From the NCBI RefSeq assembly GCF_902652985.1, contig NC_047025.1, forward strand, positions 40,920,001 through 40,984,000: a stretch of 64,000 bases of DNA, given 5' to 3'. How positions within the stretch are numbered: the first letter of the stretch is position 1; the number at the start of each line of letters is the position of its first letter. Origin of the DNA: Pecten maximus (lineage: Eukaryota). This document shows, piece by piece, positions 4,992 through 31,984 of this stretch. The position numbers were made by a program, and so were the translations under genes. A model generated the notes under the pieces. That model searched no databases, was not told the DNA's origin, and saw only the letters and a program-made list of their open reading frames with translations.

Positions 4992-4992
4992 G

Positions 4993-5022: not shown

Positions 5023-5023
<1 letters not shown>

Positions 5024-6766: not shown

Positions 6767-9204
6767 GCTGGAAGAAACCACAGGTCTTTGTGATCTGAAG
6801 TCAGAAATTCACCAGACGCTGGGGATATGTGAAAAAACAGGTAAAATAAAGGATGGCCTGTTGAATGAACACGGGACCACAAATATGGAGGTGAGGTCAG
6901 CGCTGGTAGAGATAATCCATAAACACTTTACATATGAGGAGTCCCTGATGGTTGTCAACAAAGTCTGGCAGGAGTGTGAATCTGCTCTTCTGACCGAACC
7001 GAAATCTCTTCACAAAGACATCAAAAAGTTCTTCAAAACATTAAAGAGGAAAGGAATCAAAATAGCAATATGTACCGGAGATAAACGAGAGCATGCGCTA
7101 TCTGACTTGAAAAATATTGGTGTGTTGAAATATGTTGACATGATGATCTGTGGAGACGACCCTCACTCTGTCTCCAGGTCATCTGACCACAGCACACGTC
7201 TCATCTGTGATGAGCTCAATGTTGACCCAGTGCAAACTGTGATAGTTGGCGATTCGACCAAAGACTTTTCTGTTGGGAAATCAACAAATGTACAAAAAAT
7301 CGGTGTGTTGTCAGGCGTAGGGTCTATGGATGAACTCAAATGGGTCACAGACTTCGTTGTACCCACATTGGATCATGTGATTGACTATCTCATGGATGAT
7401 CCACCTACTAGGTTCAGACAACAGAAGATACCGCCTGCGGTCAGGAAGACGATAGAAGTCGATCCCCACCGTAGACATTTCAGCACCACCTGCCAAGTGA
7501 GGCCAACTTTCTCCAAAAGTATACAGGTGAGAAATGCCTCCACGGTATCAGGAGGTGGATCCACATACGACTACGTCATCATTGGTGCTGGCTCGGCTGG
7601 CTGTACTCTTACCAATCGGCTGTCAGCTGACCCTGAAAACAAGGTGTGTGTTCTGGAGGCTGGTCCAAAAGACTACACCTGGAAGATCCACATGCCTGCT
7701 GCACTCATGTACAATCTGTGTGATGATAAGTACAACTGGTACTACCATACCGAACCAGAACCACACATGAATAACCGAGTCATGTACTGGCCACGAGGGA
7801 CGTGTCTGGGGAGGATCGTCCTCACTCAATGCTATGGTCTACATCCGTGGTAATGCCGGTGATTATGACGGATGGGAAAAGGCTGGAGCGAAAGGATGGT
7901 CTTATGCAGATTGCTTGCCATACTTTAAAAAATCTCAGACTCATGAACTTGGAGAAAATGACTACAGAGGTGGTGATGGTCCACTTCATGTGTCACGTGG
8001 TAGGAGCAACAACCCACTGCATCAGGCCTTTATAGAGGCAGGTCAGCAGGCCGGCTTCCCTTTTACGGACGACATGAACGGCTACCAACAGGAGGGCGTG
8101 GGGTGGATGGACATGACCATTCACAAAGGTCGACGCTGGAGTGCTGCCATGGCCAGCCTCAGGCCCGCACTAAAACGTGACAATGTGACCGTTGAGTCTA
8201 ACGCACTGTCTACCAGGATTGTATTTGAAAACAAGAGAGCCGTCGGTGTAGAGTATGAGCAGAAGGGTGTTAAAAAGATTGTACGAGCAGAGAAGGACGT
8301 GATTCTGAGTGGAGGTTCAATCAACTCTCCTCAGCTCCTCATGTTGTCGGGTGTGGGCAATGCAGATGAACTAAAGGCGCTGGACATCCCTGTGGTTCAA
8401 CACTTGCCAGGTGTTGGGGAGAACCTCCAGGACCACCTTGAGGTGTACGTACAGGAAGCATGCAAGCTTCCCATCACTCTCTATTCTGCTCAGTGGAAGT
8501 TCCCTCATAATATGATCCGCATAGGGCTGCAGTGGTTCCTCACACAGAAAGGTGATGGAGCTTCTGCACACTTGGAGAGTGGAGGGTTTGTCCCAAGCGA
8601 AGAAGGCTTGGAGTATCCTGACATTCAATTCCATTTCCTACCTTCTGTTGTGCAGGATCATGGACGCAAGAACGGCGATGAACATGCGTTCCAACTCCAT
8701 GTGGGATCTCAGCGTGGTACAAGTAGGGGTTATATCAAACTTAAATCTGGCAATCCCAGGGACCATCCAAAGATCGTAGCAAACTACCTGTCCACAGAAA
8801 AAGATGTGAGGACAATGAGATACAGTGTCAAAGTTGCTAGAGAAGTGTTTAAGCAGAAAGCGTTTGATCCTTTCCGTGCTGGTCGGGAATTATCGCCTGG
8901 ACCCGAATGTCAAACAGATGCCGAGATTGATTCCTTCGTCAGGGCTCAAGGCGATAGTGCTTATCATCCATCATGTACATGTAAAATGGGATCGGAGCGT
9001 GACCCAATGGCTGTAGTGGATTCACAAACTCGTGTTTTAGGTGTCGATAACCTCAGAGTTGTTGATGCCTCTATCATGCCAAATGTCATTACTGGGAATC
9101 TTAATGGCCCTACAATCATGCTGGCTGAGAAGGCCGCTGATATCATCCTGGGCAACAAACCACTGCCTCGGTCTACGGCACCTGTGTACAAGAACGATGT
9201 TTAG
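6767..9204 (+). CDS. CHDH: Copy 1 exon 4: rest of HAD domain 2, linker and complete choline dehydrogenase (GMC oxidoreductase); apparent +1 insertion at 7797-7799
   Basis: CCACAG acceptor; GAGSAG FAD motif, WKIHMPAAL, WPRG(R)VWGGSSSLNAMVY, LQDHLE, SAYHPSCTC, GNLN; closely resembles metazoan CHDH. The paralogs read CGA GGA CGT where this copy has an extra G. Confidence 0.92.
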
Positions 9205-10319: not shown

Positions 10320-10549
10320 ATAATACAAAGTTTGTCAATCATTAACATTAAATAATATATTATTAATGAAATAGTTGGCTGTTGGTGCCGATATTACTTG
10401 CTGAGATTATTCCATATTATAACTAATATATTACCCTTAAATAAGACACGATTTTCTATATATCCAGCTTATGTCTCCTTATAATTTGTTACGGATATAC
10501 TGCCTCGATAGAGAATGTTTTATTGTATTTAAATCCTTACAGAAATACC

Positions 10550-11807
10550 TATTGCATTTTTGCCAGTGAAATATACAGATTTATTGCAGTTTTGCCAGTG
10601 AAATATAGAAATTTATCAAACTAATAAAACTTATATTTTCACTGCAGCGATGATTTTGCAGTGAAAATATAAGATTTTTCAGTGAAAATATAAGTTTTGC
10701 AGTGAAAATATAAGATTTCCGTTTTTGAGCAATCAGAGCAGATCTTTGTATTCACCTCGTTGAAACTTGCATATGTTTTCAATCGAATTGGAGATAGATA
10801 AATTGGTTATTTTGCTGTATTTCTGAAATATTCTTACTAGTTTTTGACGAAATACTCACTTAACGTTAGCTATTCATGCACAGATTCTTCGATAACGGCA
10901 GAAAACGCTTAAATATTGCGCTGATCAGTCGTTTCAAAATGGCGACGTCAAGTTGACATGGAGTAACGTCACAAAGAGATGACGTCATTACTGATTCCCG
11001 CACTTTTTGACAAGTAATTTTTCGATGTTTTTAATTTTGTTTTGAAGTTGATGAAATACAATAAAAAGAAAATTGAATGTTTTCCCGTTAAATATAACAT
11101 ATATTTCACTCGTATGACAGAATATTTCTATATTTTTCACTCGTGCCTCGCACTCGTGAAAATATCGATATTCTGTCATACTCGTAAAATATATGTTATA
11201 GTAAACGGGAAACCATTCAATATCCTCTATTTATGAAACTAATAAAACTTATATTTTCACTGCAGCGATGAGCAGTGAAAATATAAGATTTTGCAGTGAA
11301 AATATAAGTTTTCCGTTTTTCACAAGTCAGAGCGGACCTTTGTATTCACCTCGTTGAAAATTTTTCCAATCGAAGCGGAGATAGATAAATTGGTTATTTT
11401 GCTGTTTTTTAGAAATATTCTGACTAGTTTTTGATTAAATGCTCACTTGACGTTAGCTATTCATGCACAGATTCTTCGATTACAGCGGAAAACGCTTAAA
11501 TTGCGTTGATAAGTCCTTTCAAAATAGCGCCGTCAAGTTGACGTGGAGTAACGTCACAAAGAGATGACGTCATTAATTCCTGCACTTTTTGACACTTTAC
11601 ATTTTAGATGTTTTTAATTTTGTTTTTAAGAAGACCAATATGAAATACAATAAAAAAAACAATTGAAGGGTTTCCCGTTTAGTATATCATATATTTCACT
11701 CGTATGACAGAATATTTCGATAGTTTTCACTCGTGAAAATATCAATATTCTGTCATACTCGTGAAATATATGCTATATTAAACGGGAAACCATTCAATAT
11801 CCTCTAT
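10550..11807. mobile_element. Family A hairpin-bearing non-autonomous element (Crypton-like), two tandem units
   Basis: Long terminal palindrome ending AATATCCTCTAT at about 11232 and 11807; further copies at 13709, 29398, 49078 and 53501. Confidence 0.7.
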
Positions 11808-11995
11808 GTATTTAATATATTAAAGAATTACGTCAATAGAGATATTTTATTGTATTTAATATATTACAGAAATACCACGTCAATAGAGATATTTTATTGT
11901 ATTTAATATATTACAGAAATACGTCAATAGAGATATTTTATTGTATTTAATATATTACAGAAATACGTCAATAGAGATATTTTTATTGTATTTAA
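11808..11995. repeat. About 40-bp AT-rich minisatellite (CGTCAATAGAGATATTTTATTGTATTTAATATATTACAGAAATA)
   Basis: About 4 copies; expanded counterpart at 52900-53500. Confidence 0.85.
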
Positions 11996-12073
11996 TTCTT
12001 TACAGATAAACCGTATCGACAGAAAATGGTAAACTGCATCAATAGGTAATTGTACAACAAGTAAACCGTTACC

Positions 12074-12191
12074 ATGGCGACTGTTAGAAAAACTTGTATA
12101 GGCCTTCTTCGCCCTAGTCGTCTCGGCAGACTCCTCGCCACATCAAATGCTGCCGTGTCATCATACCACCCCAAACTACAGACTGTGTCAG
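12074..12191 (+). CDS. CHDH: CHDH-like copy 2, coding exon 1 (presequence MATVRKTCIGLLRPSRLGRLL...)
   Basis: Near-identical to 3881-4001; ACCATGG; phase-1 donor G|GTGGGT. Confidence 0.85.
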
Positions 12192-13708
12192 GTGGGTTGT
12201 GTACTTTTGAGATGTTGTATAACTTGTATATTATTGGCATTTAATATACAAGTTAAGTATGTGGTTGGGGATATCAGCAAGTTAACACCTGTTTTCCCTC
12301 GACCAAGCCTTTTTCTTTCGCCTCAGAAAAGAGGGAAAACTAGATGTTAGCTATATGTGTGTCGTAGAAGGGCACGGCCCCGAAGCGGCAAGGGTTTGAC
12401 AGATGAGAAATTATGTTGATATTGTTCCCATTATGTATCTTTTCGTAGCAAATACGGAACCCATGGCTATCTAAGGTATTTCTAGACGTGATCAGATGGT
12501 TGTATGTGGTGCCGTGTTCTCGGGGCCTTTCACAACACTTGATAGATCGCCAAAATTACTTAACGAGCATGGTGGAATTTACATTGCTTTTAAACAGGGA
12601 TAATGCTTAAAATGTGTTTGAAAATGATAAAAAAAAACATTGCACATTTACTATCACAATTTTTGTGTTGCCCATGGGGTCCCGTCTGTCGGTGGCGCAT
12701 GAGGACGCGACTGTGTATAATGTATAAGCATGAACTTTGTTATATTCGCTGTACAGATGACTTAATCCAATCTCCTTTGTGAAGAAGAAACAACAGAGTA
12801 GCCAAGGTATAAATACCATATCTGTATGTAGACATACACATTGGAATCGTTATTGGCACTGCACGTCATGAAGCATGAGAGCATTCAACACCAACGCTGT
12901 CACTGTGGGGAATCCTTCACGCCAGAGTTCACCTCGAACAACATACCAAACGTAAACATGAGACCCATCCAATAGAAATATGTCAAAAATGCAGGAAAAC
13001 TTTGAAGTCCTCGTCGACGGTGTTTTATCATATAAAATTAAAACACGGCGGTGAAGGTTATTCATTATCACAATGTGAAACTTTTGTCGAGGATAACTAT
13101 CCACTTGTTAGACATACGAGAAGAAAACTATTAATTGCGATAAGTGTGCAAACAACATCAAAACCTTAGTTGGCCATTCAAGTTCCGAAAGGAAAACACG
13201 GAAATTCCAGTGTAACTTTTGCAACAGACTTTTTATTATAAACCGGTATCTAGTTAAACATATGGAAATGTAAAAAGACCATTCGGGATCAATACCGTTT
13301 GGATTGTGGCAAGATATATTCGTATTCATCGAGCCTAAATCACCACAAGAAGTCACGTGTTTAAAAAGACATTCATTGTGATATTTGATATTTGATCTGA
13401 ACTTTTCAGATATGTAATACCTATAATATTTCCATCCTTGTTGGAACAATATCATATGGTGTCGGGTACCATCATGCTTCCTGGCTTGTGCAAGCGACGA
13501 TTCCAATGTGTACTTTTTCGTTCAGATGGCATATGTACCATGATTTCCCTGCTGTTTCTTGTTTACAAGGATATTTGGTAGTAAATGTGCACATTAAGGG
13601 TTTCTCGTAAAACAATCGGCATTTTACGTGTTTTAAAACAATTTTTGATCATTCTCTAACATTTTCAAGCATTTAAGATACAGTATACATCTCTGGGTTC
13701 CGTAATAT

Positions 13709-14754
13709 ATAGAGGATATTGAATGGTTTCCCGTTTAATATAACATATATTTCACGAGTATGACAGAATATCGATATCACGAGTGAAAAATATCGAAATA
13801 TTCTGTCATACGAGTGAAATATATGTTATACTAAACGGGAAACCCTTCAATTGTTTTTTTTATTGCATTTAAGCATTGATGTCAATTTTTTTTTAGTTTC
13901 ATCGGGTTTTAAATTAGAAAATCATTTTCAAAAATTTATTATAAGCGTTGATGTCAATTATTTTTTAGTTTCATCGGGGTATGAAACAAATTTTGTTTGC
14001 AAACTGTATGAATCCGCGTAGCGGATTCTTACAGAAGTGTGCAAACAAAATTTGTTTGCAAACTGTATGAATCCGCGTAGCGGATTCTTACAGAAGTGTG
14101 CAAACAAAATTTGTTTCATACCCCGATGAAACTAAAAAATAATTGACATCAACGCTTATAATAAATTTTTGAAAATGATTTCCTAATTTAAAACATGTTT
14201 TATGTACAATTTTACTGGTTTTAAATGGGATTCTTTTTCTCAAATCAATACGCAACGTCAATTGTCGTATTGTGACGTCACATTCTCGGAATTTCTTTCA
14301 TAGAAGAATGAAAAGAGTTTTTTCGACCAATCACATTTGAGTATTTACCATGAAAACAAAGAAAAAATAATTATTTCATATTGATCTTCTTAAAAACAAA
14401 ATTAAAAACATCTAAAATTTATAGTTTCAAAAAGTGCGGGAATTCATGACGTCATCTCTTTGTGACGTTACTCCACGTCAATTTGACGGCGCTATTTTGA
14501 AAGGACTTATCAACGCAATTTAAGCGTTTTCCGCTGTTATCGGAGAAACTGTGCATGAATAGCTAAAGTCCAGCTAGTATTTTGTCTAAAACAAATCTGA
14601 ATATTTCAGAAATACAGCAAAATAACCAATTTATCTATCTCCGCTTCGACTGGAAAAATCAGTAAGTTTCAATGAGGTGAATACAAAGGTTAGCTCTGAC
14701 ACGGAAAACTATATACATGTATAACTATATTTCACTGGCAAAAATGCAATAAAA
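13709..14754. mobile_element. Family A element (opposite orientation), interrupted by family B
   Basis: Starts ATAGAGGATATTGAATGG, ends GCAATAAAA; uninterrupted counterpart at 49078-49613. Confidence 0.75.
13871..14374. mobile_element. Family B palindromic non-autonomous element nested in family A
   Basis: Long inverted repeat with apex GAATCCGCGTAGCGGATTC (duplicated); absent at the homologous site near 49450. Confidence 0.75.
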
Positions 14755-15269
14755 GTATTTGCTACGAATGATACCTTATGGGAACAATTTCAATATGATT
14801 TCTCACATCCGTGCCGCTTCGGAGACGCGTGCCCTACTACAACGCATAGCCGTGCTCCTAAATGTGGCGGTATACACGGTGTTCTTGGTGATGTATGGTT
14901 TTCTTGTTCAAAGAAATTTATTTTGTAACCTATACCAATTTTTATTTAAAAAAAATAATCTTAATACCTGATAATATATTTATCACGACGTCCATCTTTA
15001 TTTGAAGGCGTTCCTGTAAAGGTAAAGGTTTTATATAATAAACATTAACAATAATGTTATTATATATGTAGGCTATCAAATTATGAATATAGTTACAATA
15101 GGACGAGAACTGTAAATAATCTATAATATAAATAGTGTTTATAGAAAAGGAACGTGATATATTTTTCTCTCTTTTTTTATATCTACATATTCTGACGTTA
15201 TTTGCAAATTATTTACATTAAATGGTTCCCATTTACTAGTAACACAATATTTTGTTTCGGTGTTATCAG

Positions 15270-17182
15270 GTGTGGGGTCTACGGATGATCTGAAGTGTGA
15301 CACAGACTTGGTTGTACCCACAGTAGACCATGTGCTTGACCATATCTTGGAGAATCTACCAGCCAGTCCCATCAAACAGCAGGTACCCCCAGATGCAATT
15401 CTTGCCACAAGGAAGTCAGGGGGAGTGAATGTCCAATGTAGGTTGTTCAGCACCACCTGTCATGTGAGGCCAACTTTTTCCAGTAGTATACAGGTGAGAA
15501 ATGCCTCCACGGTATCAGGAGGTGGATCCACATACGACTACGTCATCATTGGTGCTGGCTCGGCTGGCTGTACTCTTACCAATCGGCTGTCAACTGACCC
15601 TAACAACAAGGTGTGTGTTGTGGAGGCTGGTCCAAAAGACTACACCTGGAAGATCCACATGCCTGCTGCGCTCATGTACAATCTGTGTGATGATAAGTAC
15701 AACTGGTACTACCATACCGAACCAGAACCACACATGAACAACCGTGTCATGTACTGGCCACGAGGACGTGTCTGGGGAGGATCGTCCTCACTCAATGCCA
15801 TGGTGTACGTGCGTGGCAATGCCGGTGATTATGACGGATGGGAAAAGGCTGGAGCGAAAGGATGGTCTTATGCAGATTGCTTGCCATATTTTAAAAAATC
15901 ACAAACCCACGAACTTGGAGAAAACGACTACAGAGGTGGTGATGGTCCACTTCATGTGTCGCGTGGGAGGAGCAACAACCCTCTGCATCAGGCCTTTATA
16001 GAGGCAGGTCAGCAGGCCGGCTTCCCTTTTACGGACGACATGAACGGCTACCAACAGGAGGGCGTGGGGTGGATGGACATGACCATTCACAAAGGTCGAC
16101 GCTGGAGTGCTGCCATGGCCAGCCTCAGGCCCGCACTAAAACGTGACAATGTGACAGTGGAATCTAACGCACTGTCTACCAGGATTGTGTTTGAGAACAA
16201 GAGAGCTGTTGGTGTAGAGTATGAACAGAAGGGTGTTAAAAAGATTGTACGAGCAGAGAAGGATGTGATTCTGAGTGGAGGATCAATCAACTCTCCTCAG
16301 CTCCTCATGTTGTCGGGTGTGGGCAATGCAGATGAACTTAAGGCGCTGGACATCCCTGTGGTTCAACACTTGCCTGGTGTTGGGGAGAACCTCCAAGACC
16401 ACCTTGATGTTACTGTACAAGAAGCATGCAAGCTTCCCATCACCCTCTATTCTGCTCAGTGGAAGTTCCCTCATAATATGATCCGCATAGGGCTGCAGTG
16501 GTTCCTCACTCAGAAAGGTGATGGAGCTACCACACATTTTGAGAGTGGAGGGTTTGTTCCAAGTGAAGAGAACCTCGAGTACCCTGACATCCAGTTCCAT
16601 TTTGTACCTGTAGCTACGAATGATCATGGGCGCAAAACTGGGAATGAACACGCTTACCAAATCCACGCTGGACCTATGCGTGCGACAAGTAGGGGCTATA
16701 TCAAATTGAAATCCCGGAATCCTAGAGACCACCCAAAGATCGTAGCCAACTATTTGTCCACAGAATATGATGTGAGGACAATGAGAGACTGTATCAAAGT
16801 TGCTAGGGAAGTGTTCAAACAAAAGGCGTTTGATTCTTTCCGTGCTGGTCGGGAACTATCGCCTGGACCTGAATGTCAAACAGATGCCGATATCGATGCC
16901 TTCAATCGTGCTAACGCAGACACCGACTATCACCCATCATGTACATGTAAAATGGGATCGGAGAGTGACCCAATGGCTGTGGTGGATTCTCAAACTCGTG
17001 TTCTAGGTGTCGATAACCTCAGAATTGTTGATGCCTCTATCATGCCAAATATCATTACTGGGAATCTTAATGGCCCTACAATCATGCTGGCTGAGAAGGC
17101 TGCTGATATCATCCTAGGCAACGAACCACTGCCTCCGTCTACGGCTCCTGTGTACAAAAACTATGTACAGGACGGTAAATGA
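15270..17182 (+). CDS. CHDH: CHDH-like copy 2, exon 2 (HAD-less; 676 aa spliced protein)
   Basis: Intact GMC ORF 15260-17182; TTATCAG|GT acceptor joins exon 1 in frame. Confidence 0.92.
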
Positions 17183-17892
17183 GTCTATTCGATCTGCTGA
17201 TCCGAGAGACAAACAAACAACAGTATCCGTGGATGAACATTAAGCCTATTAAACGAAAATGTTTCTGTGATTTTCGGTGTGTTGGTGATCCATCAATCAA
17301 ACCAATTCTATAATTCCTCAAAAACGGATTAAATGCATTAACCATGAAGTAATGTACTATGTGGCCTGTATATGTTGGGATAAGGAAATTCAATATCATC
17401 AGATGTTATTCCATACAGTTTGTATGTTAAATTTTATTCAATTAGGATATAAATGCCTTTTCTGTCTTTTTGCTTTAAATAACGTTTTACCTATTTTAAA
17501 AGGTTAGAGTATTCTCTTCATAAAACAAAATTAATACTAATCTAATGGAGCTGCCTCTTTGTTAAGCATTGAGATTGTAATATGTAATGTGTTATATTAT
17601 GTCCATGTTTGTACCATTGTGTATGTTTCTGTTTTGGGAGAGGACTTATATAGGCTTTGCCTGCTGTCCAATCCGATTGTCCTTGTGTCAATAAAATGTT
17701 TTGATATGAAATGAAACCATGAAGTAACATTGAAAAATCGTTCTTGAATAATAAGTTGCTAATTGGAAGAGTTACAAGGAAGTATTGTTTAATGTGAACA
17801 ATCCTTCCACTGTTCTACTACTTCTACTGGTGGCTATAATGAGATAGGTATGATGAGGTATAATATGTACCAATGGGCATATGGCCACAATA

Positions 17893-18303
17893 AATTAAGC
17901 ATTGAACTGCTTTCAGTTGGAAGTTATGGGCTGATGAATGCCAACTGGACAAAGGCAAATTTAATGAATCGCGCTAGCGCTTCATGTTGAATTTGCCTTT
18001 GTCCAGTTGGCATTCATCAGACCATAACTTCCAACTAAAAGCAGTTCAATGCTTATATTTACATTTGACAACGATTTTTAAATACTATATCCAGGAATTT
18101 TGCTCCGACGATGAATGAACAAATTATTATCGTCAAAGACGGAACAGCCTTTTCAACAGCCATCTTTCGTTATCGCCGACGTGACAATTATGACGTCACT
18201 ATATTAATGACGTCATAATGAAGATTTGGAAGTTATGGACTCATAACTTCCAAGTGAGCTTGGTAAAGTTATATAGTGGGGCTGCAGTGTAAATGTAAAT
18301 ATT
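17893..18303. mobile_element. Family C hairpin-bearing non-autonomous element
   Basis: About 75-bp-arm palindrome TAAGCATTGAACTG...CAGTTCAATGCTTA with GCGCTAGCGC apex; mirror copy at 45537-45946. Confidence 0.7.
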
Positions 18304-18484
18304 AAAAAATAAATTACAATTGAAGTATGTCGACACGGCAGTGTTACCAATTATGAAAACGTCAGTATCATTTTTCCTGTTTTGTTCAATGCAGTATTTT
18401 TTTTCAAACAACAAAATAAACGTTCTAGTATCAAATGTCAGCAGCCTATCTATGATAATTGTTCTCGTACAGAAGACCGGTCAT

Positions 18485-19245
18485 ATCAGCTTAGTACCCT
18501 AAACTGGGTATCTACCTTTTTAGTACCGGTCACATCAACTTAGTACCCTAAACTGGGTATCTACACTTTAGTACCGGACATCAACTTAGTACCCTAATCT
18601 GGGTATCTACCTTTTTAGTACCGGTCACATCAACTTAGTACCCTAAACTGGGTATCTACACTTTAGTACCGGACATCAACTTAGTGCTCTAAACTGGGTA
18701 TCTACCTTTTTAGTACCCTAAACTGAGTATCTACCTTTTTAGTACCGGACACATCAATTTAGTACCCTAAACTGGGTATCTACCTTTTTAGTACCGGACA
18801 CATCAATTTAGTACCCTAAACTGGGTACCTACCTTTTTAGTACCGGACTTCATCTTAATACCCTAAACTGGGTATCTACCTTTCTAGTACGGACATCAAC
18901 TTAGTACCCTAAACTGGTTATCTACCTTTTTAGTACCGGAAGCATCAATTTAGTTACCTAAACTGGGTATCTACCTTTTTAGTACCGGACTTCAACTTAA
19001 TACCCTAAACTGGGTATCTACCTTTCTAGTACGGACATCAACTTAGTACCCTAAACTGGTTATCTACCTTTTTAGTACCGGAAGCATCAATTTAGTTACC
19101 TAAACTGGGTATCTACCTTTTTAGTACCGGAAGCATCAATTTAGTTACCTAAACTGGGTATCTACCTTTTTAGTACCGGAAGCATCAATTTAGTTACCTA
19201 AACTGGGTATCTACACTTTAGTACCGGACTTCAACTTAATACTCC
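18485..19245. repeat. About 49-bp minisatellite (TTAGTACCCTAAACTGGGTATCTACCTTTTTAGTACCGGACACATCAAC)
   Basis: About 15 copies. Confidence 0.95.
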
Positions 19246-19289
19246 TTTTTAATTACGGACACATCACCGAAATCGTTCGTGGAAAAGAA

Positions 19290-20625
19290 AGGAAATTGGT
19301 GTATCGTACTTGTTTCTTAGAAGAAGACATAGCTCGAAGCTTGTTTTCCAATAACAATGAAAGTAATTATTTACACTATGGAGTGAGACCATTTAAAATA
19401 TTGTTTAAACGAAGAGGAGGAAGAAAACGAATTGCTACACTCTTGTTAACGGGAATGGTGACAGCTGTGCAGTATTGAATTTCGTAGCTCTATTAATTCC
19501 GCAGGTTCACCTCAATTTAATTTTGAAACATATTCATGTTTGTACATATGGAAATGAAAATGACTTTCGTACATCGCAACCAGTTATGAATTTGATTAGT
19601 GAAGGTCCAATGACTTTACTCAAACGCTACACTGATCATTCTCCGAAACGTCACGGACGAAATCCATTACCGGTTGTGATATATACGAACGGCTATCAGA
19701 TACAACTATTGTTTTTGGAAAGCTTTCAGTGTCCAAAAGTATACTCATCACACACTTCTAATTTGGTTTATACAAATGTACATTCATTAGAAGTCTAAAA
19801 GTGATGTTATAGCAAAATCATGTATTTTTTTCGCATTTTACCATTTTGTGGGCTTATGGGTTTTTTGGCACCAACACCCAGTTTAAAGTTTTTGGGGGTA
19901 AGTTTTGGAAAGCTTTTATACATCCATTAAAGGTCTAGGAGAGATATTGTGACGTACAATTTCAAAATGACATGCTTATACATACATAACAAACGAATGC
20001 ATAGTGCGACTGCTGCCGCCAGTGAGCTTTCGCAATCATTGATTGCACTTTTAAGTACCGAACACATCAGCTTAGTACCCTTACCTGTAATGCTACCAAA
20101 ATAGTACCGGACACATCAGCGAAATGTCTGTGGGTCATCTAGATTTAAATGCACGGAAGCGATAGGTTTATGTAAAAAATAGAGACGGTGCTAGTTCCAG
20201 TGAGGATAAAAAAAAATTGGCGTACCGTACTTGTTTCTAAGAAGAAGACATAGCTCGAAGCTTGTTTTCCAATAACAATGAAAGTAATTCTTTACACGCA
20301 TGGAGTGAGACCATTTAAAATATTGTTTAAACGAAGAGGAGGAAGAAAACGTATTGTTTCACACCCTAGTTAACGAGAATGGTGACGGCTGCAGTGTTGA
20401 GTTTCGTAGCTGTATTAATTCCGCAGGTTCACCTCAATTTACTTTTGAAACATATTCATGTTTGTAGATATGGAAATGAAAATGACTTTCGTACATCGCA
20501 ACCAGTTATGAATTTAATTAGTGAAGGTCCAATGACTTTACTCAAACGATACACTGATCATTTGTCTGATGAAGGTGACGTGTGAATTCTCCGAAACGTC
20601 ACAGACGAAATCCATTACCGGTTAG
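19290..20625. repeat. Local direct duplication of about 390 bp (19290-19680 and 20215-20625)
   Basis: Shared GAAGAAGACATAGCTCGAAGC...CCATTACCGGTT; one copy in the right arm (about 40275-40650). Confidence 0.85.
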
Positions 20626-21154
20626 GAATGTACGACGCTTTACATGTATATCGGTAAGATCTTGTTAGGAATGTAAAGTATCATGGGATCTATATGATGC
20701 AATTTCATTAGTACAGATGAATTCTCGTGTATACATATACATGTTGTTCTTTTGTGGGGTTTTCTATGCTACGACCGGCTATCAGCTACGACTATGGTCT
20801 AGTGTTGTGTTTCACTGGATACAGTGTGGATTGTGTTACTGTTGTAATCCCTGGTACAGTATTACCCACCATACTATTGCTTATAACAGGTCTGGAGTCG
20901 TGTAAGTGAGCGTATAATCATTGTAAGTAATGAGGCAGCATTGTTTGTCAGCCATTCGCAAGGATAACTAGGTCAGAGTTTTAACAGGTAAAATGTAATA
21001 TAACCCAGGTAAGTATCACGCGATCATCCCAATTATCATATGAAGTAATTGATAGAAATTTGTATATATACGAGTGGTGTATTCCCCGTGTCCAATGGCG
21101 GCGGCTCACAGGAAGGAATTCTTCATACCGTACAGTTCGATATATAACATTGTC

Positions 21155-23725
21155 AGTATGACAATTATATTCCTGTAACTTTATCATTGTGATAATTACA
21201 CTTTCTGTAACTTTATCATTGTGATAATTACACTTTCTGTAACTTTATCATTGTGATAATTACACTTTCTGTAACTTTTGTAAGTATTATGATAATTCTT
21301 CCTCAAATTTTGTCAGAATGATAATTGCACTTCCTGTAATTCTGTCAGTATGATAATTATACTTCCTGTCATTTGATAAGTATGATAATTATACTTTCTG
21401 TAATTCTGTCAGTATGATAATTATACTTCCTGTCATTTGATAAGTATGATAATTATACTTCCTGTAATAATGTCAGTATGATATTTATACTTTCTGTAAT
21501 TCTGTCAGTATGATAATTATACTTCCTGTCATTTGATAAGCATGATAATTATACTTTCTGTAATTCTGTCAGTATGATAATTATACTTCCTGTCATTTGA
21601 TAAGCATGATAATTATACTTCCTGTAATTCTGTCAGTATGATAATTGCACTTCCTGTAATTCTGTCAGTATGATAATTGCACTTCCTGTAATTCTGTCAG
21701 TATGATAATTATACTTCCTGTAATTCTGTCAGTATGATAATTGCACTTCCTGTAATTCTGTCAGTATGATCATTATACTCCTGTAATTCTGTCAGTATGA
21801 TAATTATACTTCCTGTAATTCTGTCAGTATGATCATTATACTCCTGTAATTCTGTCAGTATGATAAATATACTTCCTGTAATTCTGTCAGTATGATAATT
21901 ATACTTTCTGTAAATCTGTCAGTATGATAATTATACTTCCTGTAATTCTATCAGTATGATAATTATATTTTCTGTAATTATGTCAGTATGATAATTATAC
22001 TTCCTGTAATAATGTCAGTATGATAATTATACTTTCTGTAATTCTGTCAGTATGATAATTATACTTTCTGTTATTCTATCAGTATGATAATGATACTTCC
22101 TGTAACTTTGTCAGTATGATAATTATACTTCCTGTAATTCTGTCAGTATGATAATTATACTTCCTGTAATTCTGTCAGTATGATCATTATACTCCTGTAA
22201 CTTTGTCAGTATGATAATTATACTTCCTGTAATTCTATCAGTATGATAATTATACTTCCTGTAATTCTATCAGTATGATAATTATACTTCCTGTAATTCT
22301 GTCAGTATGATAATTATACTTCCTGTAATTCTGTCAGTATGATAATTATACTTCCTGTAATTCTGTCAGTATGATAATTATACTTTCTGTAATTCTGTCA
22401 GTATGATAATTATACTTCCTGTAATAATGTCAGTATGATAATTATACTTTCTGTAATTCTGTCAGTATGATTATTATACTTCCTGTCATTTGATAAGTAT
22501 GATAATTATACTTCCTGTAATTCTGTCAGTATGCTAATTATACTTCCTGTAATAATGTCAGTATGATCATTATACTTCCTGTAAATATGTCAGTATGACA
22601 ATTATACTTCCTGTAACTTTGTCAGTATGATAATTATACTTCCTGTAATTCTATCAGTATGATAATTATATTTTCTGTAATATTCTGTCATTATGATAAT
22701 TATACTTTCTGTTATTCTATCAGTATGATAATTATATTTTCTGTAATTCTGTCAGTATGATAATTATACTTCCTGTAATTCTATCAGTATGATAATTATA
22801 TTTTCTGTAATTCTGTCAGTATGATAATTATACTTCCTGTAATAATGTCAGTATGATAATTATACTCCTGTAATTTTGTCAGTATGATAATTATATTTCC
22901 TGTAATTCTGTCAGTATGATAATTATACTTCCTGTAATTCTGTCAGTATGATCATTATACTCCTGTAACTTTGTCAGTATGATAATTATACTTCCTGTCA
23001 TTTGATAAGTATGATAATTATACTTCCTGTAATTATTTCAGTATGATAATTAAACTTCCTGTAATTCTGTCAGTATGATAATTATACTTCCTGTAATTTT
23101 GTCAGCATGATAATTATGCTTCCTGTAATTTGGTCAGTATGATCATTATACTCCTGTAACTTTGTCAGTATGATAATTATATTTCCTGTAATTCTGTCAG
23201 TATGATAATTATACATCTTGTGATTTTGTCAGTATGATAATTATATTTCCTGTAATTTTGTCAGTATGATAATTATACTTCCTGTAATTCTGTCAGTATG
23301 ATAATTCTACTCCTGTATCTTTGTCAGTATGATAATTATACCTCCTGTAATTTTGTCAGTATGATAATTATATTTCCTGTAATTCTGTCAGTATGATAAT
23401 TCTACTCCTGTAATTATGTCAGTATGATAATTATAATTCCTGTAATTCTGTCAGTATGATAATTATACTTCCTGTAATTCTGTCAGTATGATAATTATAC
23501 TTCCTGTAATTCTGTCAGTATGATAATTATACTTCCTGTAATTCTGTCAGTATGATAATTATACTTCCTGTAATTCTGTCTGTATGGTATTTATACTTCC
23601 TGTAATTCTGTCAGTATGATATTTATACTTCCTGTAATTCTGTCAGTATGATAATTATACTTCCTGTAATTCTGTCAGTATGATAACTATACTTCCTGTC
23701 ATTCTGTCAGTATGAAAATTATATA
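21155..23725. repeat. 32-bp minisatellite (CAGTATGATAATTATACTTCCTGTAATTCTGT), about 80 copies
   Basis: Continuous array with period 32. Confidence 0.97.
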
Positions 23726-24115
23726 TCCTTCGATGTGGTATGAAAACGTCCCTGTAAATCTGTCAACTGTGACGTGAGATTTTTGTAAACTTTACATTGG
23801 TCGTGTGAGATTTTGTAATTGGGTTCATGAACCTATGAACGTGTGCCTTTTCTGTAAATAACCTGGCAGGACAATCATGTCCCTATACAATGTGATATAT
23901 AATTTACAGTATTCGTCTTTAGTTTTAGTAGTTTACCAAATGTGTATAATAATTTAGGTAAGGAATATCCTCTAAGCATGGCAATAGCTTACCGATGGAG
24001 GTTGCCACATGGAAAAAGTATTGCTATTGACCCAGTAACGAGTCAGTTAAATGTACTTTTGTTTAATTACAGATATACGACACCAACAGAGTTGTCCTAA
24101 AGGTAGACTGTCACC

Positions 24116-24200
24116 ATGACCACTGTTTTGAAAACGGGTATCAGCATATTTCGACCATCTGCAGTGTCCCCGTACCGCCCCATCCTACAGACTGTGTTAG
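24116..24200 (+). CDS. CHDH: CHDH-like copy 3, coding exon 1 (shortened presequence MTTVLKTGISIFRPSAVSPYRPILQTVL)
   Basis: CACCATG; homologous to exon 1 of copies 1 and 2 with an 11-codon deletion; phase-1 donor G|GTGTGT. Confidence 0.8.
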
Positions 24201-24458
24201 GTGTGTAGTGTACAGCTGATTGGTACAGAACAGATGTAGTATCTACCTATTCATATTTGTATTTGATTATTTTCAACTCGACATCGACAAAACCAGGGCA
24301 AACTACGAACAAACCAGAGCCCCACAGGACTTATCGACCACCCGAGTTCAGAAGTATACTGATAAATTATATTTTACTTTTAAAATAAGATTATCGCATC
24401 CCACCACGTGTCCTAGTAGAGAAAGGCTTGTTCATTTGAACAAACTTCATAGCTATTC

Positions 24459-24548
24459 CAATCTAATTAAAATCTAGATGGTCAATATCACTACGTTACA
24501 TGAACATCGTTCATGTAACGTAGTGATAATGACCATCTAGTTAGATTG
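24459..24548. mobile_element. 90-bp foldback MITE with 9-bp TSD TAGCTATTC (Mutator-like)
   Basis: CAATCTAA...TTAGATTG ends, near-perfect palindrome, TSD on both sides, empty site at about 38908-38917. Confidence 0.85.
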
Positions 24549-25196
24549 TAGCTATTCATACCAGGATACCCACCGACTAATGTTATAATACTAGGCATAT
24601 TAGTTTTTGGGAAATAGATTGGTGTCATTCATCACTGTATGTCATTGGCCTAATATCATTAAACTAGACTTTTTGTTTGGGTTGTTAAGAAATTATTTGA
24701 AAAAAATTGGCCGCTGTGGCCATGATAGAACTTTGACTTTGCTCTAGCATGCTACCGGCATGATACCAGGAATATGTGCCTCTTATTATTATCATTTTTT
24801 ATAAAATTATAGAGTTGCTTAAAAATATTAAGACATTTGACCCAAGTGCCATTGAAAGCAGGTCAATGTCAATTATTTGAACAGACTTGTTAGTCCTTCA
24901 TCCCAGTATCATACTGGCCCATTAGCATGACCCTGTGTCACTTGGCTATTGCGAAGTCGGTCATCTGACCTCCTGTGACTTTAAAAGTAGATCAAGGATT
25001 TTGGTAGCCCTACATCCAAGCATGCCGCTGACCAAAATTCATGACACTTTGTAGATTGTTTAAGGACGCGCGAAGCTGGACAAATGACGTTTAGAATAGT
25101 GCTCTTTAGACTTTGTCCTCAGGTGATCTGAAACCTAAATTTACATAGAGAAAATATGAACAGTTGAGTCGGACACGGAGGCGTGGTCTGTTTCAT

Positions 25197-25555
25197 TGCT
25201 CCGATAGCTTAGTCAGAGCGCCGACCACGTAACTTCAGGTGAGGTGGCAGCGATATTTAAGTCAGAACGCCGGACACGTAGCCTCAGGTGAGGGGGCTGC
25301 GATAGCTAGGTCAGAACGCCGGCCACGTAACCTCAGGTGAGGGGGCTGCGATAGCTAAGTCAGAACGCCGGCGACGTAACCTCGGGTGAGGGGGCTGCGA
25401 TAGCTAAGTCAGAACGCCGGCCACGTAGCCTCAGGCGAGGGGCCTGCGATAGCTAAGTCAAAACGCCGGCCACGTAACCTCAGGTGAGGGGGCTGCTATA
25501 GCTAAGTCAGAACGCCGGCCACGTAACCTCAGGTGAGGGGCCTGCGATAGCTTAT
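25197..25555 (+). repeat. 49-bp GC-rich tandem repeat x7 resembling a tRNA/SINE 5' head
   Basis: Unit GCGATAGCTAAGTCAGAACGCCGGCCACGTAACCTCAGGTGAGGGGGCT; first unit begins GCTCCGATAGCTTAGTCAGAGCG. Confidence 0.85.
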
Positions 25556-25951
25556 TCAGTTACAGCGCAAGACAAACATAAGAAACATTAGACTTAGAGG
25601 AGTTGAAATTGAAAGTCTCTGCTCTGTAACCTGTTCTGATAGGTTCCTCGATATAATCAGCTTTGTATGAAAACAAACAATAAGGACACCAAGAGATGGG
25701 CGGTTTGTTCCCAAATAAATATCTTTCGTCAGCAATGATGCAGAAATTAAACTCTCACGATTTCATCCTCGACGTACTTCCTGGGTCCGTCCATCTTTCT
25801 AAGAAGGCGTTCCTTAAGTTTGGAATGGGATATGTTAGTGTAAAGATTTGAAATGATTTATATGAACAATGATTTTATTATATATGTAGCTATGCTATCA
25901 AATAATTGATATAGTTACAACAGAACGAGAATTGTCAATGATATATTATAT

Positions 25952-26799
25952 AAATAGAGGTTACACAACGAGTGATGTTGGATATGGAATTTATTTCACA
26001 CGAGTAATTTATTCTTGTTTTTTGCAACTTTTTAAAAATAACTTACGAGTGTGAAATAAATTCCATATCCAACAATTTCGAGTCGTATGACCTGTTTCAT
26101 TTCGCGTATGCGTAAATAAAGTGTACCGGTGACGTCCGGGACCCGTTGATGTGACGTCATTAGATTATTGATGACGTCAATAACAAATGCAGCTTGGGTC
26201 AAAGTTCACCGTGTTAGCCAATCAAAATGCGCACAAAGTTTATACCACGTGTGGTATAAACAGATTGTTAATCAACAGCTGTAATGATTAACTGATGATC
26301 TGAGAGTTGAATAACACAGGGTATTGTGGTAGAAATAGAGGTTACACAACGAGTGGTTGTTGGATATGGAATTTATTTCACACGAGTAAGTTATTTTTTT
26401 AAAGTTACAAAAGACACGAGCTTTAGCGAGTGTTTTTTGCAACTTTTAAAAAATATCTTACGAGTGTGAAATAAATTCCATATCCAACAATTTCGAGTCG
26501 TTTGACCTGTTTCTACCACAATAATATCGGCTTGAATCAAAGGGAAACGTGGACAAGTATAATGTCACGTATGCAAATAAAGTGTACCGGTGACGTCCGG
26601 GACCCGGTGATGTGACGTCTTTAGATTATTGATGACGTCAATAACAATTGCAGCTTGGGTCAAAGTTCACCGTGTTAACCAATCAAAATGCGTACAGAGT
26701 TTATACCACGTGTGGTATAAACAGATTGTTAATCAACAGCTGTAATGATTAACTGATGGTCTGAGAGTTGAATAACACAGGGTATTGTGGTAGAAATAG
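25952..26799. mobile_element. Family D Crypton-like non-autonomous element, head-to-tail dimer bounded by AAATAG
   Basis: AAATAG at 25952, 26333 and 26794; internal long palindrome; homologous empty site TATAAATAGTGTTT at about 15127-15140. Confidence 0.75.
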
Positions 26800-26918
26800 T
26801 GTTTATAGACAAGAAAAGTAATATATTTTTCTCGTTTGAAAATTCTGACGTTATGTTTTAATTCTTTGCATTAAAAGATTCCCATTTAACTCAATATTTT
26901 GTTTCGGTGTGTTACCAG

Positions 26919-28777: not shown

Positions 28778-28871
28778 ATTGTGGAAAGACGTTTCTATAG
28801 TTCCAGTCAGCTATTCCAAGGTTAATGGAAAGGCTTGTGATCTATGTTTTTCATATTTAGTTTTTTTTATT

Positions 28872-28968
28872 CGAGTGGCACATCGGTAACACCCTTGTCT
28901 TTCACCTTCGCGAAAGGGGTTCGACTCCCTGATCGGATGTTAAAAGGTATTGGGGTAATCTGGGCCTA
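28872..28968 (+). mobile_element. Decayed tRNA-derived SINE head
   Basis: Box A-like TGGCACATCGGT and box B GGTTCGACTCC; diverged mirror copy at about 35755-35848. Confidence 0.45.
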
Positions 28969-31980: not shown

Positions 31981-31984
31981 ATAA

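What the first reader, a model, noticed from the sequence alone, without database searches (positions are those of the whole stretch)
16397..16933. Paralogs lose the choline-anchoring glutamate and gain an aspartate beside the catalytic histidine
Seen: copy 1 keeps LQDHLEVY (Glu codon 8440-8442) and DSAYHP, as in vertebrate CHDH. Copies 2 and 5 have LQDHLDVT and DTDYHP; copies 3 and 4 have LQDHFNV(T/I) and GTTDYHP. Catalytic His (YHP) and Asn (GNLN) are intact in all. Established: in Arthrobacter choline oxidase Glu312 (LQDHPE) anchors the trimethylammonium group and Val464 sits two residues before catalytic His466. Inference, from motif alignment by eye: the pocket's acidic charge has moved, so copies 2-5 are probably active dehydrogenases of a different substrate (choline analogue, sulfonium or arsonium alcohol, or dietary compound).
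Basis: partly seen in the sequence, partly recalled or inferred. Interest (0 to 1): 0.8.

Follow-up and report, generated by a model that had tools for sequence, protein, structure and literature searches.

The report
Scallop choline-dehydrogenase paralogs with rebuilt pocket
The king scallop has four extra, intact copies of the mitochondrial enzyme choline dehydrogenase (one type shown transcribed and spliced) that keep the catalytic machinery but have rebuilt the substrate pocket, and other bivalve lineages made similar changes independently, which points to an unstudied change of enzyme specificity.

Summary
The window is Pecten maximus chromosome DNA carrying a choline dehydrogenase (CHDH) gene cluster.

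- Copies 2 and 5 read LQDHLDVT and DTDYHP. Copies 3 and 4 read LQDHFNV(T/I) and TTDYHP.
- HMM alignment to Arthrobacter choline oxidase places these changes at Glu312 and Val464. His351, His466 and Asn510 are kept.

- "Copy 1" is frameshifted as assembled (an extra G near 7798-7800). The intact canonical gene lies about 7 kb upstream of the window.
- More pocket and gate positions also change, at the equivalents of residues 314, 331, 355, 357 and 359.
- All four variant copies are intact two-exon genes without HAD domains, with pairwise dN/dS of 0.1-0.2.
- Copy 2 is transcribed and spliced in RNA runs.
- The D-type was not found in the protein collection searched.
- Largely the same positions change in separately arisen paralog clades of mussels, venerid and mactrid clams, and a fourth unnamed clade. 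A single origin is rejected (AU p = 1e-35).

A column scan not guided by known sites found only 7 of 298 conserved columns changing in at least 3 of 5 variant groups. Five of the seven are literature choline-site or gate positions.

My reading is that these are active dehydrogenases with altered specificity. The substrate is unknown. In the D-type an acidic residue is added rather than moved. I rate this a new variant of a known kind, of moderate to high interest.

The parts
6861..9204 (+). Copy 1: last exon of a canonical HAD-CHDH fusion paralog (LQDHLEVY, DSAYHP). It is split into two ORFs (6861-7853 and 7834-9204) by a 1-nt insertion in a G run near 7798-7800.
   Evidence: ORFs; Pfam HAD plus GMC_N/GMC_C; the insertion is seen against all other copies; dN/dS against copy 0 is 0.10.
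12074..12191 (+). Copy 2 (D-type) exon 1. Arg-rich, acid-free N-terminal peptide MATVRKTCIGLLRPSRLGRLL..., read as a mitochondrial presequence.
   Evidence: tblastn with exon 1 of P0003; GT donor and in-frame junction; RNA contigs spliced at 12187/8 to 15266/7 in runs X1 and X3.
15270..17182 (+). Copy 2 (D-type) exon 2: a remnant of the HAD C-terminus, a linker and the whole GMC domain. Equivalents: 312 = Asp 16406-16408; 314 = Thr 16412-16414; 331 = Phe 16538-16540; gate 355/357/359 = V/V/T 16604-16618; 464 = Asp 16925-16927; His466 16931-16933; Asn510 17063-17065.
   Evidence: RNA contigs with 0-4 mismatches cover 15266-17400, including error-free pieces over both motifs.
24116..24200 (+). 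Copy 3 (N-type) exon 1 (MTTVLKTGISIFRPSAVSPYRPILQT).
   Evidence: The two-exon model gives 647 aa, the same length as NCBI protein P0004, and P0004 is 100% identical to copy 3 over residues 360-560.
26919..28777 (+). Copy 3 (N-type) exon 2: GMC domain with Asn at 312-eq (28025-28027), Thr at 314-eq, Phe at 331-eq, gate K/G/T, a 4-residue loop deletion and Asp at 464-eq (28532-28534). H351, H466 and N510 are kept.
   Evidence: (P0004 is 100% identical).
35953..37796 (-). Copy 4 (N-type) exon 2: LQDHFNVI and TTDYHP (Asn 36703-36705, Asp 36196-36198).
   Evidence: Its motifs match NCBI protein P0003.
39167..39251 (-). Copy 4 exon 1. The peptide is identical to that of copy 3 exon 1.
   Evidence: The two-exon model gives 642 aa, the length of P0003.
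46658..48564 (-). Copy 5 (D-type) exon 2: LQDHLDVT and DTDYHP (Asp 47432-47434, Asp 46913-46915). It is 98% identical in protein to copy 2.
   Evidence: (dS 0.07, dN/dS 0.10 against copy 2).
52697..52814 (-). Copy 5 exon 1 (MTTVGKTCIGLLRPSRLGRLL...).
   Evidence: An intact 674-aa two-exon ORF by analogy with the RNA-proven junction of copy 2. The junction itself is not verified by reads.
10320..55146 (.). Inverted (palindromic) segmental duplication. Copies 2 and 3 on the plus strand are mirrored by copies 4 and 5 on the minus strand, around the assembly gap 33969-34468.
   Evidence: Collinear inverted blastn matches at 86-96% identity. dS is 0.07 (2 vs 5) and 0.16 (3 vs 4), too diverged for haplotigs.

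Best explanation
Copies 2-5 are functional mitochondrial FAD-dependent (GMC) alcohol dehydrogenases. They arose from the scallop HAD-CHDH fusion gene by tandem duplication and then an inverted segmental duplication.

They lost the HAD modules. A presequence exon now splices into an acceptor inside former HAD coding sequence. They kept the hydride-transfer machinery: FAD fold, His351, the His466/Asn510 pair. They rebuilt the substrate site.

Pocket and gate changes, in choline-oxidase numbering:
- 312: E to D (D-type) or N (N-type).
- 314: Y to T or I.
- 331: L to F.
- Gate 355/357/359: L/S/V to V/V/T (D-type) or K,T/G/T (N-type).
- 464: A to D.

Shown here: the residue equivalences, intact ORFs, purifying selection, transcription and splicing of the D-type, presence of the N-type in Argopecten, and independent recurrence of largely the same position changes in other bivalve lineages.

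Inferred: the enzymes still oxidise an alcohol by the CHDH mechanism, but with altered substrate preference. The substrate is probably still a cationic (onium or amine) alcohol, because an acidic or polar residue is always kept or gained next to the flavin. The substrate itself is not known.
For: - Family and fold. Pfam GMC_N and GMC_C are found in all copies. The best solved relative is BetA 9lq0 (E 3e-179). The AF2 model has pLDDT 86.5 and pTM 0.90. It superposes on 9lq0 and on choline oxidase 2jbv/4mjw at TM 0.87-0.90.
- Residue mapping. E312, W331, H351, V355, F357, M359, V464, H466 and N510 were mapped by phmmer. Their roles as betaine-contact, charge and gate residues come from PMC10980864.
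- Selection. All pairwise dN/dS values are 0.07-0.21, including 2 vs 5 (0.10) and 3 vs 4 (0.12). Stem branches show 0.28-0.37 in the substrate domain.
- Mosaic divergence. Fixed synonymous differences between types lie almost only in the substrate domain. The FAD part looks homogenised while the pocket region stays distinct.
- Gene models. All four variant copies give intact two-exon ORFs.
- Expression. RNA contigs cover copy 2's exons but not its intron, and carry a GT..AG joint in two runs.
- Age. The N-type has a counterpart in Argopecten irradians, P0005.
- Recurrence. Variant clades nest inside the mytilid, pectinid and heterodont clades and a fourth clade. A single origin is rejected at AU p = 1e-35.
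- Column scan. Only 7 of 298 conserved columns change in at least 3 of 5 variant groups. Five are literature pocket or gate sites (hypergeometric p = 3e-6). The 464-equivalent is D/E/N in 19 of 19 variants and 0 of 75 others.
Against: - There is no biochemical datum.
- No atomic coordinates were available, so proximity of the changed side chains to the flavin and substrate rests on homology, not on measured distances.
- No branch reaches dN/dS above 1.
- L331F and S357V are states found in genuine bacterial choline dehydrogenase 9lq0.
- E-to-D alone also occurs in otherwise canonical echinoderm CHDH, so choline may still be a substrate.
- All copies still score above the TIGR01810 betA equivalog cut-off.
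- Expression of the N-type rests on NCBI gene models only.
- With four independent origins the sign tests cannot reach significance.
- The variant groups were first recognised from three of the scanned columns, so only columns 314, 355, 357 and 359 are independent confirmation.
- I named the clade for the AU test after seeing the tree.
Confidence: 0.55

Rival explanations
1. The paralogs are still choline dehydrogenases. The pocket changes tune kinetics (Km, pH or ionic-strength dependence, oxygen reactivity) or remove coupling to the HAD phosphatase modules. This would be subfunctionalised isoenzymes for betaine osmolyte synthesis, not a new substrate.
For: - All copies pass the betA equivalog threshold.
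- The D-type keeps an acid at 312.
- F at 331 and V at 357 are the bacterial BetA states.
- E-to-D occurs in otherwise canonical starfish and brittle-star CHDH.
- Bivalves are osmoconformers rich in betaine (general knowledge).
Against: - The N-type has lost the acid at 312 altogether. It also changes residues conserved in 96-99% of CHDH: H378Q, R383H, the Asp four residues before the catalytic His, and the DHGR loop, where P. maximus has a deletion and Argopecten has R-to-C.
- No canonical CHDH among the 75 compared, cnidarians to fish, has D/E/N at 464. The further sequences scanned by motif, nematodes and mammals included, show none either.
- Seven pocket and gate positions changing in parallel in several lineages looks like more than kinetic trimming.
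Confidence: 0.3
2. The variant copies are redundant duplicates drifting toward loss, or non-catalytic proteins. The pocket changes would then reflect relaxed constraint on substrate binding.
For: - Copy 1 in the same cluster already carries a frameshift as assembled.
- The D-type was not found among the proteins searched.
- Stem dN/dS is raised relative to the tips.
Against: - All four ORFs are intact, with dN/dS of 0.10-0.12 between the recent duplicates.
- The catalytic and FAD residues are invariant.
- Copy 2 is spliced and transcribed.
- The N-type is retained in Argopecten.
- Relaxed constraint would not hit the same few columns in four lineages while 262 of 298 conserved columns stay unchanged in every variant group.
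Confidence: 0.07
3. The shared signature is ancestral rather than convergent. There would be one ancient bivalve duplication, with later concerted evolution (gene conversion) making each variant look like its own lineage's canonical copy.
For: - Gene conversion is evident within the P. maximus cluster. The FAD-domain part has almost no fixed differences between types, synonymous ones included.
- Phe at 331 and an acid or amide at 464 are shared by most variant groups.
Against: - A tree of the substrate domain alone, with the trait columns removed, still nests variants within their own lineages.
- A single origin costs 188 log-likelihood units, AU p = 1e-35.
- The lineages chose different residues: 314 is T/I, R, C or A; 464 is D, E or N.
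- Uncorrected pS between types in the P. maximus substrate domain is 0.35-0.7. By my estimate this is far below what a pre-bivalve-radiation split would leave.
Confidence: 0.08

Closest known systems
Animal mitochondrial choline dehydrogenase (CHDH, EC 1.1.99.1), including the invertebrate HAD-CHDH fusion form (P. maximus P0001, M. yessoensis P0002)
   Same: They are direct paralogs, 86-93% identical over the GMC domain to the scallop's own canonical gene. They nest inside the pectinid CHDH clade. They share the FAD fold, His351, His466 and Asn510, an N-terminal presequence-like exon, and a location in the same gene cluster.
   Different: The pocket signature E-Y-L-L-S-V-A, conserved from cnidarians to mammals, is replaced by D-T-F-V-V-T-D (copies 2 and 5) or N-T/I-F-K/T-G-T-D (copies 3 and 4). 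The HAD domains are lost. The P. maximus N-type has a 4-residue deletion in the conserved DHGRK loop.
Bacterial choline dehydrogenase BetA (Pseudomonas denitrificans structure 9lq0; TIGR01810)
   Same: This is the best solved relative (E 3e-179 by sequence, Foldseek E 7e-62). It has Phe at the 331-equivalent and Val at the 357-equivalent, as in the D-type.
   Different: BetA keeps Glu312, Tyr314 and Ala464 (LQDHLEMY, ETAFHP). The scallop variants do not.
Arthrobacter globiformis choline oxidase (2jbv, 4mjw, V464A 3ljp)
   Same: Same fold (TM 0.87-0.90). It is the reference for residue roles: E312 stabilises the trimethylammonium charge; W331, H351, V464, H466 and N510 contact betaine; V355, F357 and M359 form the entrance gate (PMC10980864).
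   Different: It is an oxidase with covalently bound FAD and about 33% identity. No natural or mutant form with an acid at 464 was found here.
Engineered choline oxidase variants with widened alcohol scope (Turner group, cited in PMC10980864)
   Same: Specificity was changed by mutating active-site and access-channel residues. From my memory, not verified here (one search found nothing), these included positions 355, 357 and 359, the gate positions that change here.
   Different: Those are laboratory variants of a bacterial oxidase. Here the changes are natural, recurrent and include the charge residues at 312 and 464.
Variant CHDH paralogs of other bivalves (Mytilus californianus P0047, Mercenaria P0036, Ruditapes P0038, Mactra P0066)
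   Same: They show similar changes at the same positions: D at 312, non-Tyr at 314, F at 331, D/E/N at 464, and altered gate residues. All are annotated only as 'choline dehydrogenase-like' or hypothetical.
   Different: They arose separately. They use other residues: R or C at 314, E or N at 464. The mytilid form keeps a HAD domain.

Membership tests
GMC oxidoreductase superfamily | GMC_oxred_N (PF00732) and GMC_oxred_C (PF05199) domains | tested here: met
   All five window copies match: E 1e-46 to 1e-59 for the N domain and 1e-36 to 1e-39 for the C domain.
GMC oxidoreductase superfamily | Two-domain FAD/substrate fold | tested here: met
   The AF2 model of the copy 2 domain has pLDDT 86.5 and pTM 0.90. 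Foldseek probability is 1.00 to 9lq0, 2jbv and 4mjw, with TM 0.80-0.93.
GMC oxidoreductase superfamily | Catalytic His/Asn pair in the C-terminal domain (His466/Asn510 of choline oxidase) and an N-terminal GxGxxG FAD motif | tested here: met
   YHP His and GNLN Asn align to H466 and N510. GAGSAG is present. All are invariant in the six copies.
Choline dehydrogenase BetA/CHDH (TIGR01810 equivalog) | Whole-protein HMM score above the curated cut-off (732.1 bits) | tested here: met
   D-type scores 780 and N-type 745. Canonical P0001 scores 775. The model does not separate variants from canonical copies.
Choline dehydrogenase BetA/CHDH | Phylogenetic placement inside the animal CHDH clade | tested here: met
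   The variants nest in the pectinid CHDH clade with SH-aLRT 100.
Choline dehydrogenase BetA/CHDH | Conserved choline-site residues: Glu at 312, Tyr at 314, a small residue (A/S/G) at 464 | tested here: not met
   Copies 2 and 5 have D/T/D. Copies 3 and 4 have N/T or I/D. The 75 canonical sequences have E in 71, Y in 67 and A/S/G/V in all 75.
Choline dehydrogenase BetA/CHDH | Oxidation of choline to betaine aldehyde | not testable with these tools
   This needs an enzyme assay.
Mitochondrial matrix or inner-membrane enzyme | N-terminal targeting presequence | tested here: inconclusive
   The exon 1 peptides are Arg-rich and free of acidic residues. No targeting predictor was available.

The most novel reading that the evidence does not exclude
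Bivalves have repeatedly and independently evolved a new mitochondrial flavoenzyme from CHDH. It would oxidise a different onium or amino alcohol of marine origin, for example arsenocholine, a sulfonium alcohol, homocholine or a less methylated ethanolamine. The hallmark is an acidic or amide residue two positions before the catalytic His. If the substrate were arsenocholine, this would be the long-missing animal enzyme of arsenobetaine formation.
Probability: 0.12. Interest if true: 0.85.

Novelty: new variant of a known kind. Interest (0 to 1): 0.62.

Why it matters
CHDH is treated as a single-function housekeeping enzyme, and automated annotation (the TIGR01810 model, NCBI product names) calls all these copies "choline dehydrogenase".

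The data show a pocket signature that is constant from cnidarians to mammals. It has been rewritten at the same handful of substrate-contact and gate positions in at least four separately arisen paralog clades, three of them in named bivalve families. The genes stay expressed and constrained throughout.

This is a natural, replicated experiment in GMC-enzyme specificity. It gives flavoenzymologists a defined set of seven or eight residues to test. It gives marine physiologists candidate genes for unexplained onium-compound metabolism (betaines, arsenicals, sulfonium compounds) in filter feeders. It also flags an expressed scallop gene type (D-type) that I did not find in the protein collection searched.

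Tried and rejected
- Haplotig artefact for copies 4 and 5: rejected. The inverted halves are only 86-96% identical, with dS 0.07 and 0.16, and each pair is under purifying selection.
- Single ancient origin of the variant signature: rejected by the AU test and by a substrate-domain-only tree.
- Gene-wide positive selection: not found. Crude parsimony stem dN/dS is 0.28-0.37. No codeml was available for a proper branch-site test.
- Measuring side-chain distances in the predicted model: not possible. Structure prediction returns no coordinates and /data held none.
- Mapping the N-terminal pocket residues (W61, M62, L65, S101) onto the scallop proteins: failed. Choline oxidase did not rank in the five alignments shown for the N-terminal query. 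It remains open whether the changes in the P. maximus N-type copies 3 and 4 in AALMYNLC (M to K, C to H/Y; the Argopecten N-type P0005 keeps M and has R for C) hit W61/M62/L65.
- Deciding whether canonical-type RNA contigs come from copy 0 or copy 1: inconclusive (98.0% vs 97.4%). The frameshift therefore could not be checked, and the single read-laying run was already used on copy 2.
- Literature searches for bivalve CHDH paralogs, the E312 mutants, engineered gate mutants and arsenocholine oxidation returned nothing usable beyond PMC10980864.
- The large representative-protein search was not run. The word search and family scans had already placed the protein.
- Joined (spliced) protein models were only translated locally to check frame.
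- Assembly gaps were left untouched.
Full report
**What the window is.** Two NCBI Pecten maximus proteins named "choline dehydrogenase, mitochondrial-like" correspond to window ORFs. P0004 is copy 3 and P0003 is copy 4. P0004 is 100% identical to copy 3 over residues 360-560, and the two-exon models give the same lengths as the two proteins. The window is G000:C11:40920001-40984000.

The window holds five large single-exon GMC-oxidoreductase ORFs. All carry Pfam GMC_oxred_N and GMC_oxred_C. A whole-genome search finds a sixth copy about 7 kb upstream of the window, at C11:40911211-40912857. Its 818-codon exon encodes the C-terminal 500 residues of P0001 exactly. P0001 is a 1051-aa HAD-HAD-CHDH fusion protein with the canonical motifs.

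So the cluster runs as follows:
- copy 0: canonical, intact, outside the window;
- copy 1: canonical motifs, 6861-9204;
- copy 2: D-type, plus strand;
- copy 3: N-type, plus strand;
- copy 4: N-type, minus strand;
- copy 5: D-type, minus strand.

**Check of the observation.**
- Copy 1: LQDHLEVY (Glu codon 8440-8442) and DSAYHP.
- Copies 2 and 5: LQDHLDVT and DTDYHP.
- Copies 3 and 4: LQDHFNVT / LQDHFNVI and TTDYHP.

A phmmer alignment of copy 2 to choline oxidase (2jbv, 3nne, and the V464A mutant 3ljp) confirms the by-eye mapping. The residue after LQDH-L aligns with Glu312. The Asp two residues before YHP aligns with Val464. The YHP His is His466. The first Asn of GNLN is Asn510. The His of IQFHF is His351.

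PMC10980864 lists W61, S101, I103, W331, H351, V464, Y465, H466 and N510 as contacting glycine betaine in 4MJW. It describes E312 as stabilising the positive charge of choline, and M62, L65, V355, F357 and M359 as the hydrophobic gate.

An AlphaFold2 model of the copy 2 GMC domain has mean pLDDT 86.5 and pTM 0.90. It superposes on BetA 9lq0 and on choline oxidase 2jbv/4mjw with TM 0.87-0.90 and rmsd 2.3-2.4 A. The equivalences therefore rest on a conserved fold. I could not obtain coordinates, so no side-chain distances were measured.

1. Copy 1 is not a clean reference. Compared with all other copies it has one extra G in a G run (CGAGGGACG versus CGAGGACG, about 7798-7800). This splits the exon into ORFs 6861-7853 and 7834-9204. 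Its dN/dS against copy 0 is 0.10 at dS 0.29. The shift is therefore either very recent or a homopolymer assembly error. I could not test this, because the one read-laying run had been used on copy 2.

2. The pocket changes go beyond two residues. Between the types there are fixed differences at the equivalents of several positions:
   - 314: Tyr to Thr/Ile;
   - W331: Leu to Phe;
   - gate 355/357/359: L/S/V to V/V/T in the D-type and K,T/G/T in the N-type.

   The N-type additionally changes residues that are 96-99% conserved in CHDH. These are H378Q, R383H, the Asp four residues before the catalytic His, and the DHGRK loop. In that loop the two P. maximus copies carry a 4-residue deletion, and Argopecten has R to C.

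3. All four variant copies are two-exon genes. Exon 1 encodes an Arg-rich, acid-free presequence-like peptide. It is spliced to an acceptor inside what was HAD coding sequence, giving intact ORFs of 676, 647, 642 and 674 aa for copies 2, 3, 4 and 5. The joined models were only translated locally to check frame. Nothing joined was sent to a search tool.

**Are they real, separate, constrained and expressed?**

The block holding copies 2 and 3 and the block holding copies 4 and 5 are collinear in inverted orientation, around the gap at 33969-34468, at 86-96% DNA identity. dS is 0.07 between copies 2 and 5 and 0.16 between copies 3 and 4, with dN/dS 0.10 and 0.12. This is a true inverted segmental duplication with both halves under purifying selection. 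It is not a haplotig artefact.

All pairwise dN/dS values in the cluster are 0.07-0.21. Parsimony counts on the stem branches give 0.28-0.37 in the substrate domain. That is higher than on the tips but below 1.

Divergence is mosaic.
- The FAD-domain part has almost no amino-acid differences and almost no fixed differences between types, synonymous ones included.
- The substrate domain carries 9-17 fixed synonymous and 7-17 fixed non-synonymous differences per stem.

I read this as gene conversion homogenising the flanks while the pocket region is kept distinct.

For expression I laid Logan contigs of four runs of the same organism on 12000-17400. Two are on record as RNA-seq.
- In three of the four runs (the two RNA-seq runs and X2) contigs cover exon 2 essentially end to end with 0-4 mismatches per piece in the RNA-seq runs; X9 covers only its 3' half.
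- There are error-free pieces over 16211-16509 and 16843-16966, which hold both motifs.
- Both RNA-seq runs show a GT..AG joint from 12187/8 to 15266/7.
- The intron is silent apart from a high-copy repeat at 13629-14895.

The D-type is thus transcribed and correctly spliced. Yet no 100% match to copy 2 or copy 5 appears among the proteins searched. The D-type therefore seems absent from public annotation. For the N-type, expression rests only on the NCBI gene models.

**Evolutionary context, the main new result.** A motif census of the 120 best homologues showed the same kind of change in other bivalves.
- Mytilus californianus P0047 and three unnamed relatives: D at 312, R at 314, F at 331, E/N at 464.
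- Mercenaria, Ruditapes and Mactra: D, C, F, N.
- A fourth, unnamed group: E/D, C/A, L/I/M, N/E.
- Argopecten irradians P0005 is an N-type.

In a tree of the whole GMC domain each variant group nests with the canonical CHDH of its own lineage. The same holds in a tree of the substrate domain alone with the trait columns removed. Forcing the scallop, mussel and clam variants into one clade costs 188 log-likelihood units (AU p = 1e-35). I named that group after seeing the tree. The 464 state needs four changes on the tree.

I then scanned all columns without reference to known sites. Of 298 columns at least 85% conserved among 75 non-variant sequences, 262 are unchanged in every variant group. 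Only 7 change in at least 3 of the 5 groups. These are the equivalents of E312, 314, W331, V355, F357 and M359, plus one Gly after the loop.

Five of these seven are among the 15 literature pocket or gate positions (hypergeometric p = 3e-6). The 464 column missed the conservation filter (A 63, S 7, G 4, V 1). It is nonetheless D/E/N in all 19 variants and in none of the 75 others.

Caveats on this result:
- The groups were first recognised from columns 312, 331 and 464. Only columns 314, 355, 357 and 359 are therefore independent confirmation.
- With four origins, paired sign tests cannot reach significance. Co-changes go the same way in 3-4 of 4 pairs and never the opposite way.

The canonical signature E-Y-L-L-S-V-A holds from cnidarians to fish in the aligned set. 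The motif census extends it to nematodes and mammals.

**Interpretation.** The hydride-transfer apparatus is untouched and the genes are maintained. I therefore take copies 2-5 to be active flavoprotein alcohol dehydrogenases.

The replaced residues are the ones that, in choline oxidase, hold the trimethylammonium group, line the pocket next to the flavin, and gate entry. Their recurrent replacement argues for a selected change in what is bound or how.

It does not fit the D-type, which keeps an acid at 312 (shortened to Asp) and adds a second at 464.

An acidic or amide side chain is always present next to the flavin. A cationic alcohol therefore remains the most likely substrate class. This is inference.

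Several observations temper the claim.
- Phe at 331 and Val at 357 are the states of genuine bacterial BetA 9lq0.
- E to D alone occurs in otherwise canonical echinoderm CHDH.
- All copies still pass the betA equivalog threshold: 780 and 745 bits against a cut-off of 732, with canonical at 775.

Retained choline activity with altered kinetics is therefore the main rival. I found no evidence for any particular alternative substrate.

**Novelty.** The genes are known only as automatic "choline dehydrogenase-like" models, and the D-type not even as that. Literature searches found no description of bivalve CHDH paralogs or of a GMC enzyme with an acid at this position. I class it as a new variant of a known kind. 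The fold and chemistry are ordinary. The pocket rewiring is recurrent, convergent and position-specific, and that is the point of interest.

The taxa and synteny of the unnamed variant clusters are therefore unknown.
- No model coordinates were available, and no codeml.
- Only one read-laying run was allowed.
- Assembly gaps were not filled.

**Earlier notes of this scan on the same window.** Note s1-794596 (HAD-less paralogs splice into a former HAD acceptor) agrees with what I found, and I verified it with RNA contigs. Note s1-794527 (the HAD-CHDH fusion at 3881-9204 is a real expressed gene) needs a qualification. As assembled, that copy is frameshifted, and the intact annotated fusion gene is the upstream copy 0.

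Noticed in passing
window 7798-7800: Copy 1 has one extra G in a G run relative to all five other copies. This breaks the HAD-CHDH exon into two ORFs. It could be a real recent frameshift or a homopolymer assembly error.
   Followed up: partly
L003 (G000:C11:40909711-40914357), about 7 kb upstream of the window: A sixth, intact canonical HAD-HAD-CHDH copy. Its last exon encodes the C-terminal 500 aa of NCBI P0001 exactly. This, not window copy 1, is the annotated canonical gene.
   Followed up: yes
window 13629-14895 (intron of copy 2): A high-copy repeat. Contig depth reaches hundreds to about 190,000 in the laid runs, with many internal joints and loose ends. It is probably a transcribed transposon or satellite. 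Related sequence lies near copy 5 (about 49.4-54 kb).
   Followed up: no
window 31981-33576 and 34473-35111, flanking the gap 33969-34468: A long tandem array at the centre of the inverted duplication, with repeat offsets of about 32-36 bp. It translates as ...ITQGHHYLPTIY.... Other arrays lie at 18476-19283, 21145-23729 and 40721-45362. The centre of the palindrome is itself an assembly gap.
   Followed up: no
copies 2 and 5 (window 12074-17182 and 46658-52814): No 100% match to the D-type exists among the 5.8 billion clustered proteins searched, although the gene is spliced and transcribed. It seems to be missing from the public P. maximus protein annotation.
   Followed up: partly
P0031, P0047 (mytilid variant paralogs): The mussel variants (852-894 aa) keep a HAD domain. 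Loss of the HAD modules is therefore a scallop and clam feature and is not tied to the pocket change.
   Followed up: no
P0183, P0190, P0181 (sea urchin CHDH-like paralogs): Echinoid second copies show a different pocket variant. P0183 has E312 to Q (LQDHFQLY). All three have Ile at the 464-equivalent (TIYHP). CHDH pocket divergence is therefore not confined to bivalves.
   Followed up: no
window 12184-12196 vs 15255-15275 (likewise in copies 3-5): The exon 1 donor (..CTGTGTCAG|GTG) and the exon 2 acceptor context (..GTGTTATCAG|GTGTGG) resemble each other. The first residues after the joint (SGVGS) are the end of the ancestral HAD domain.
   Followed up: no
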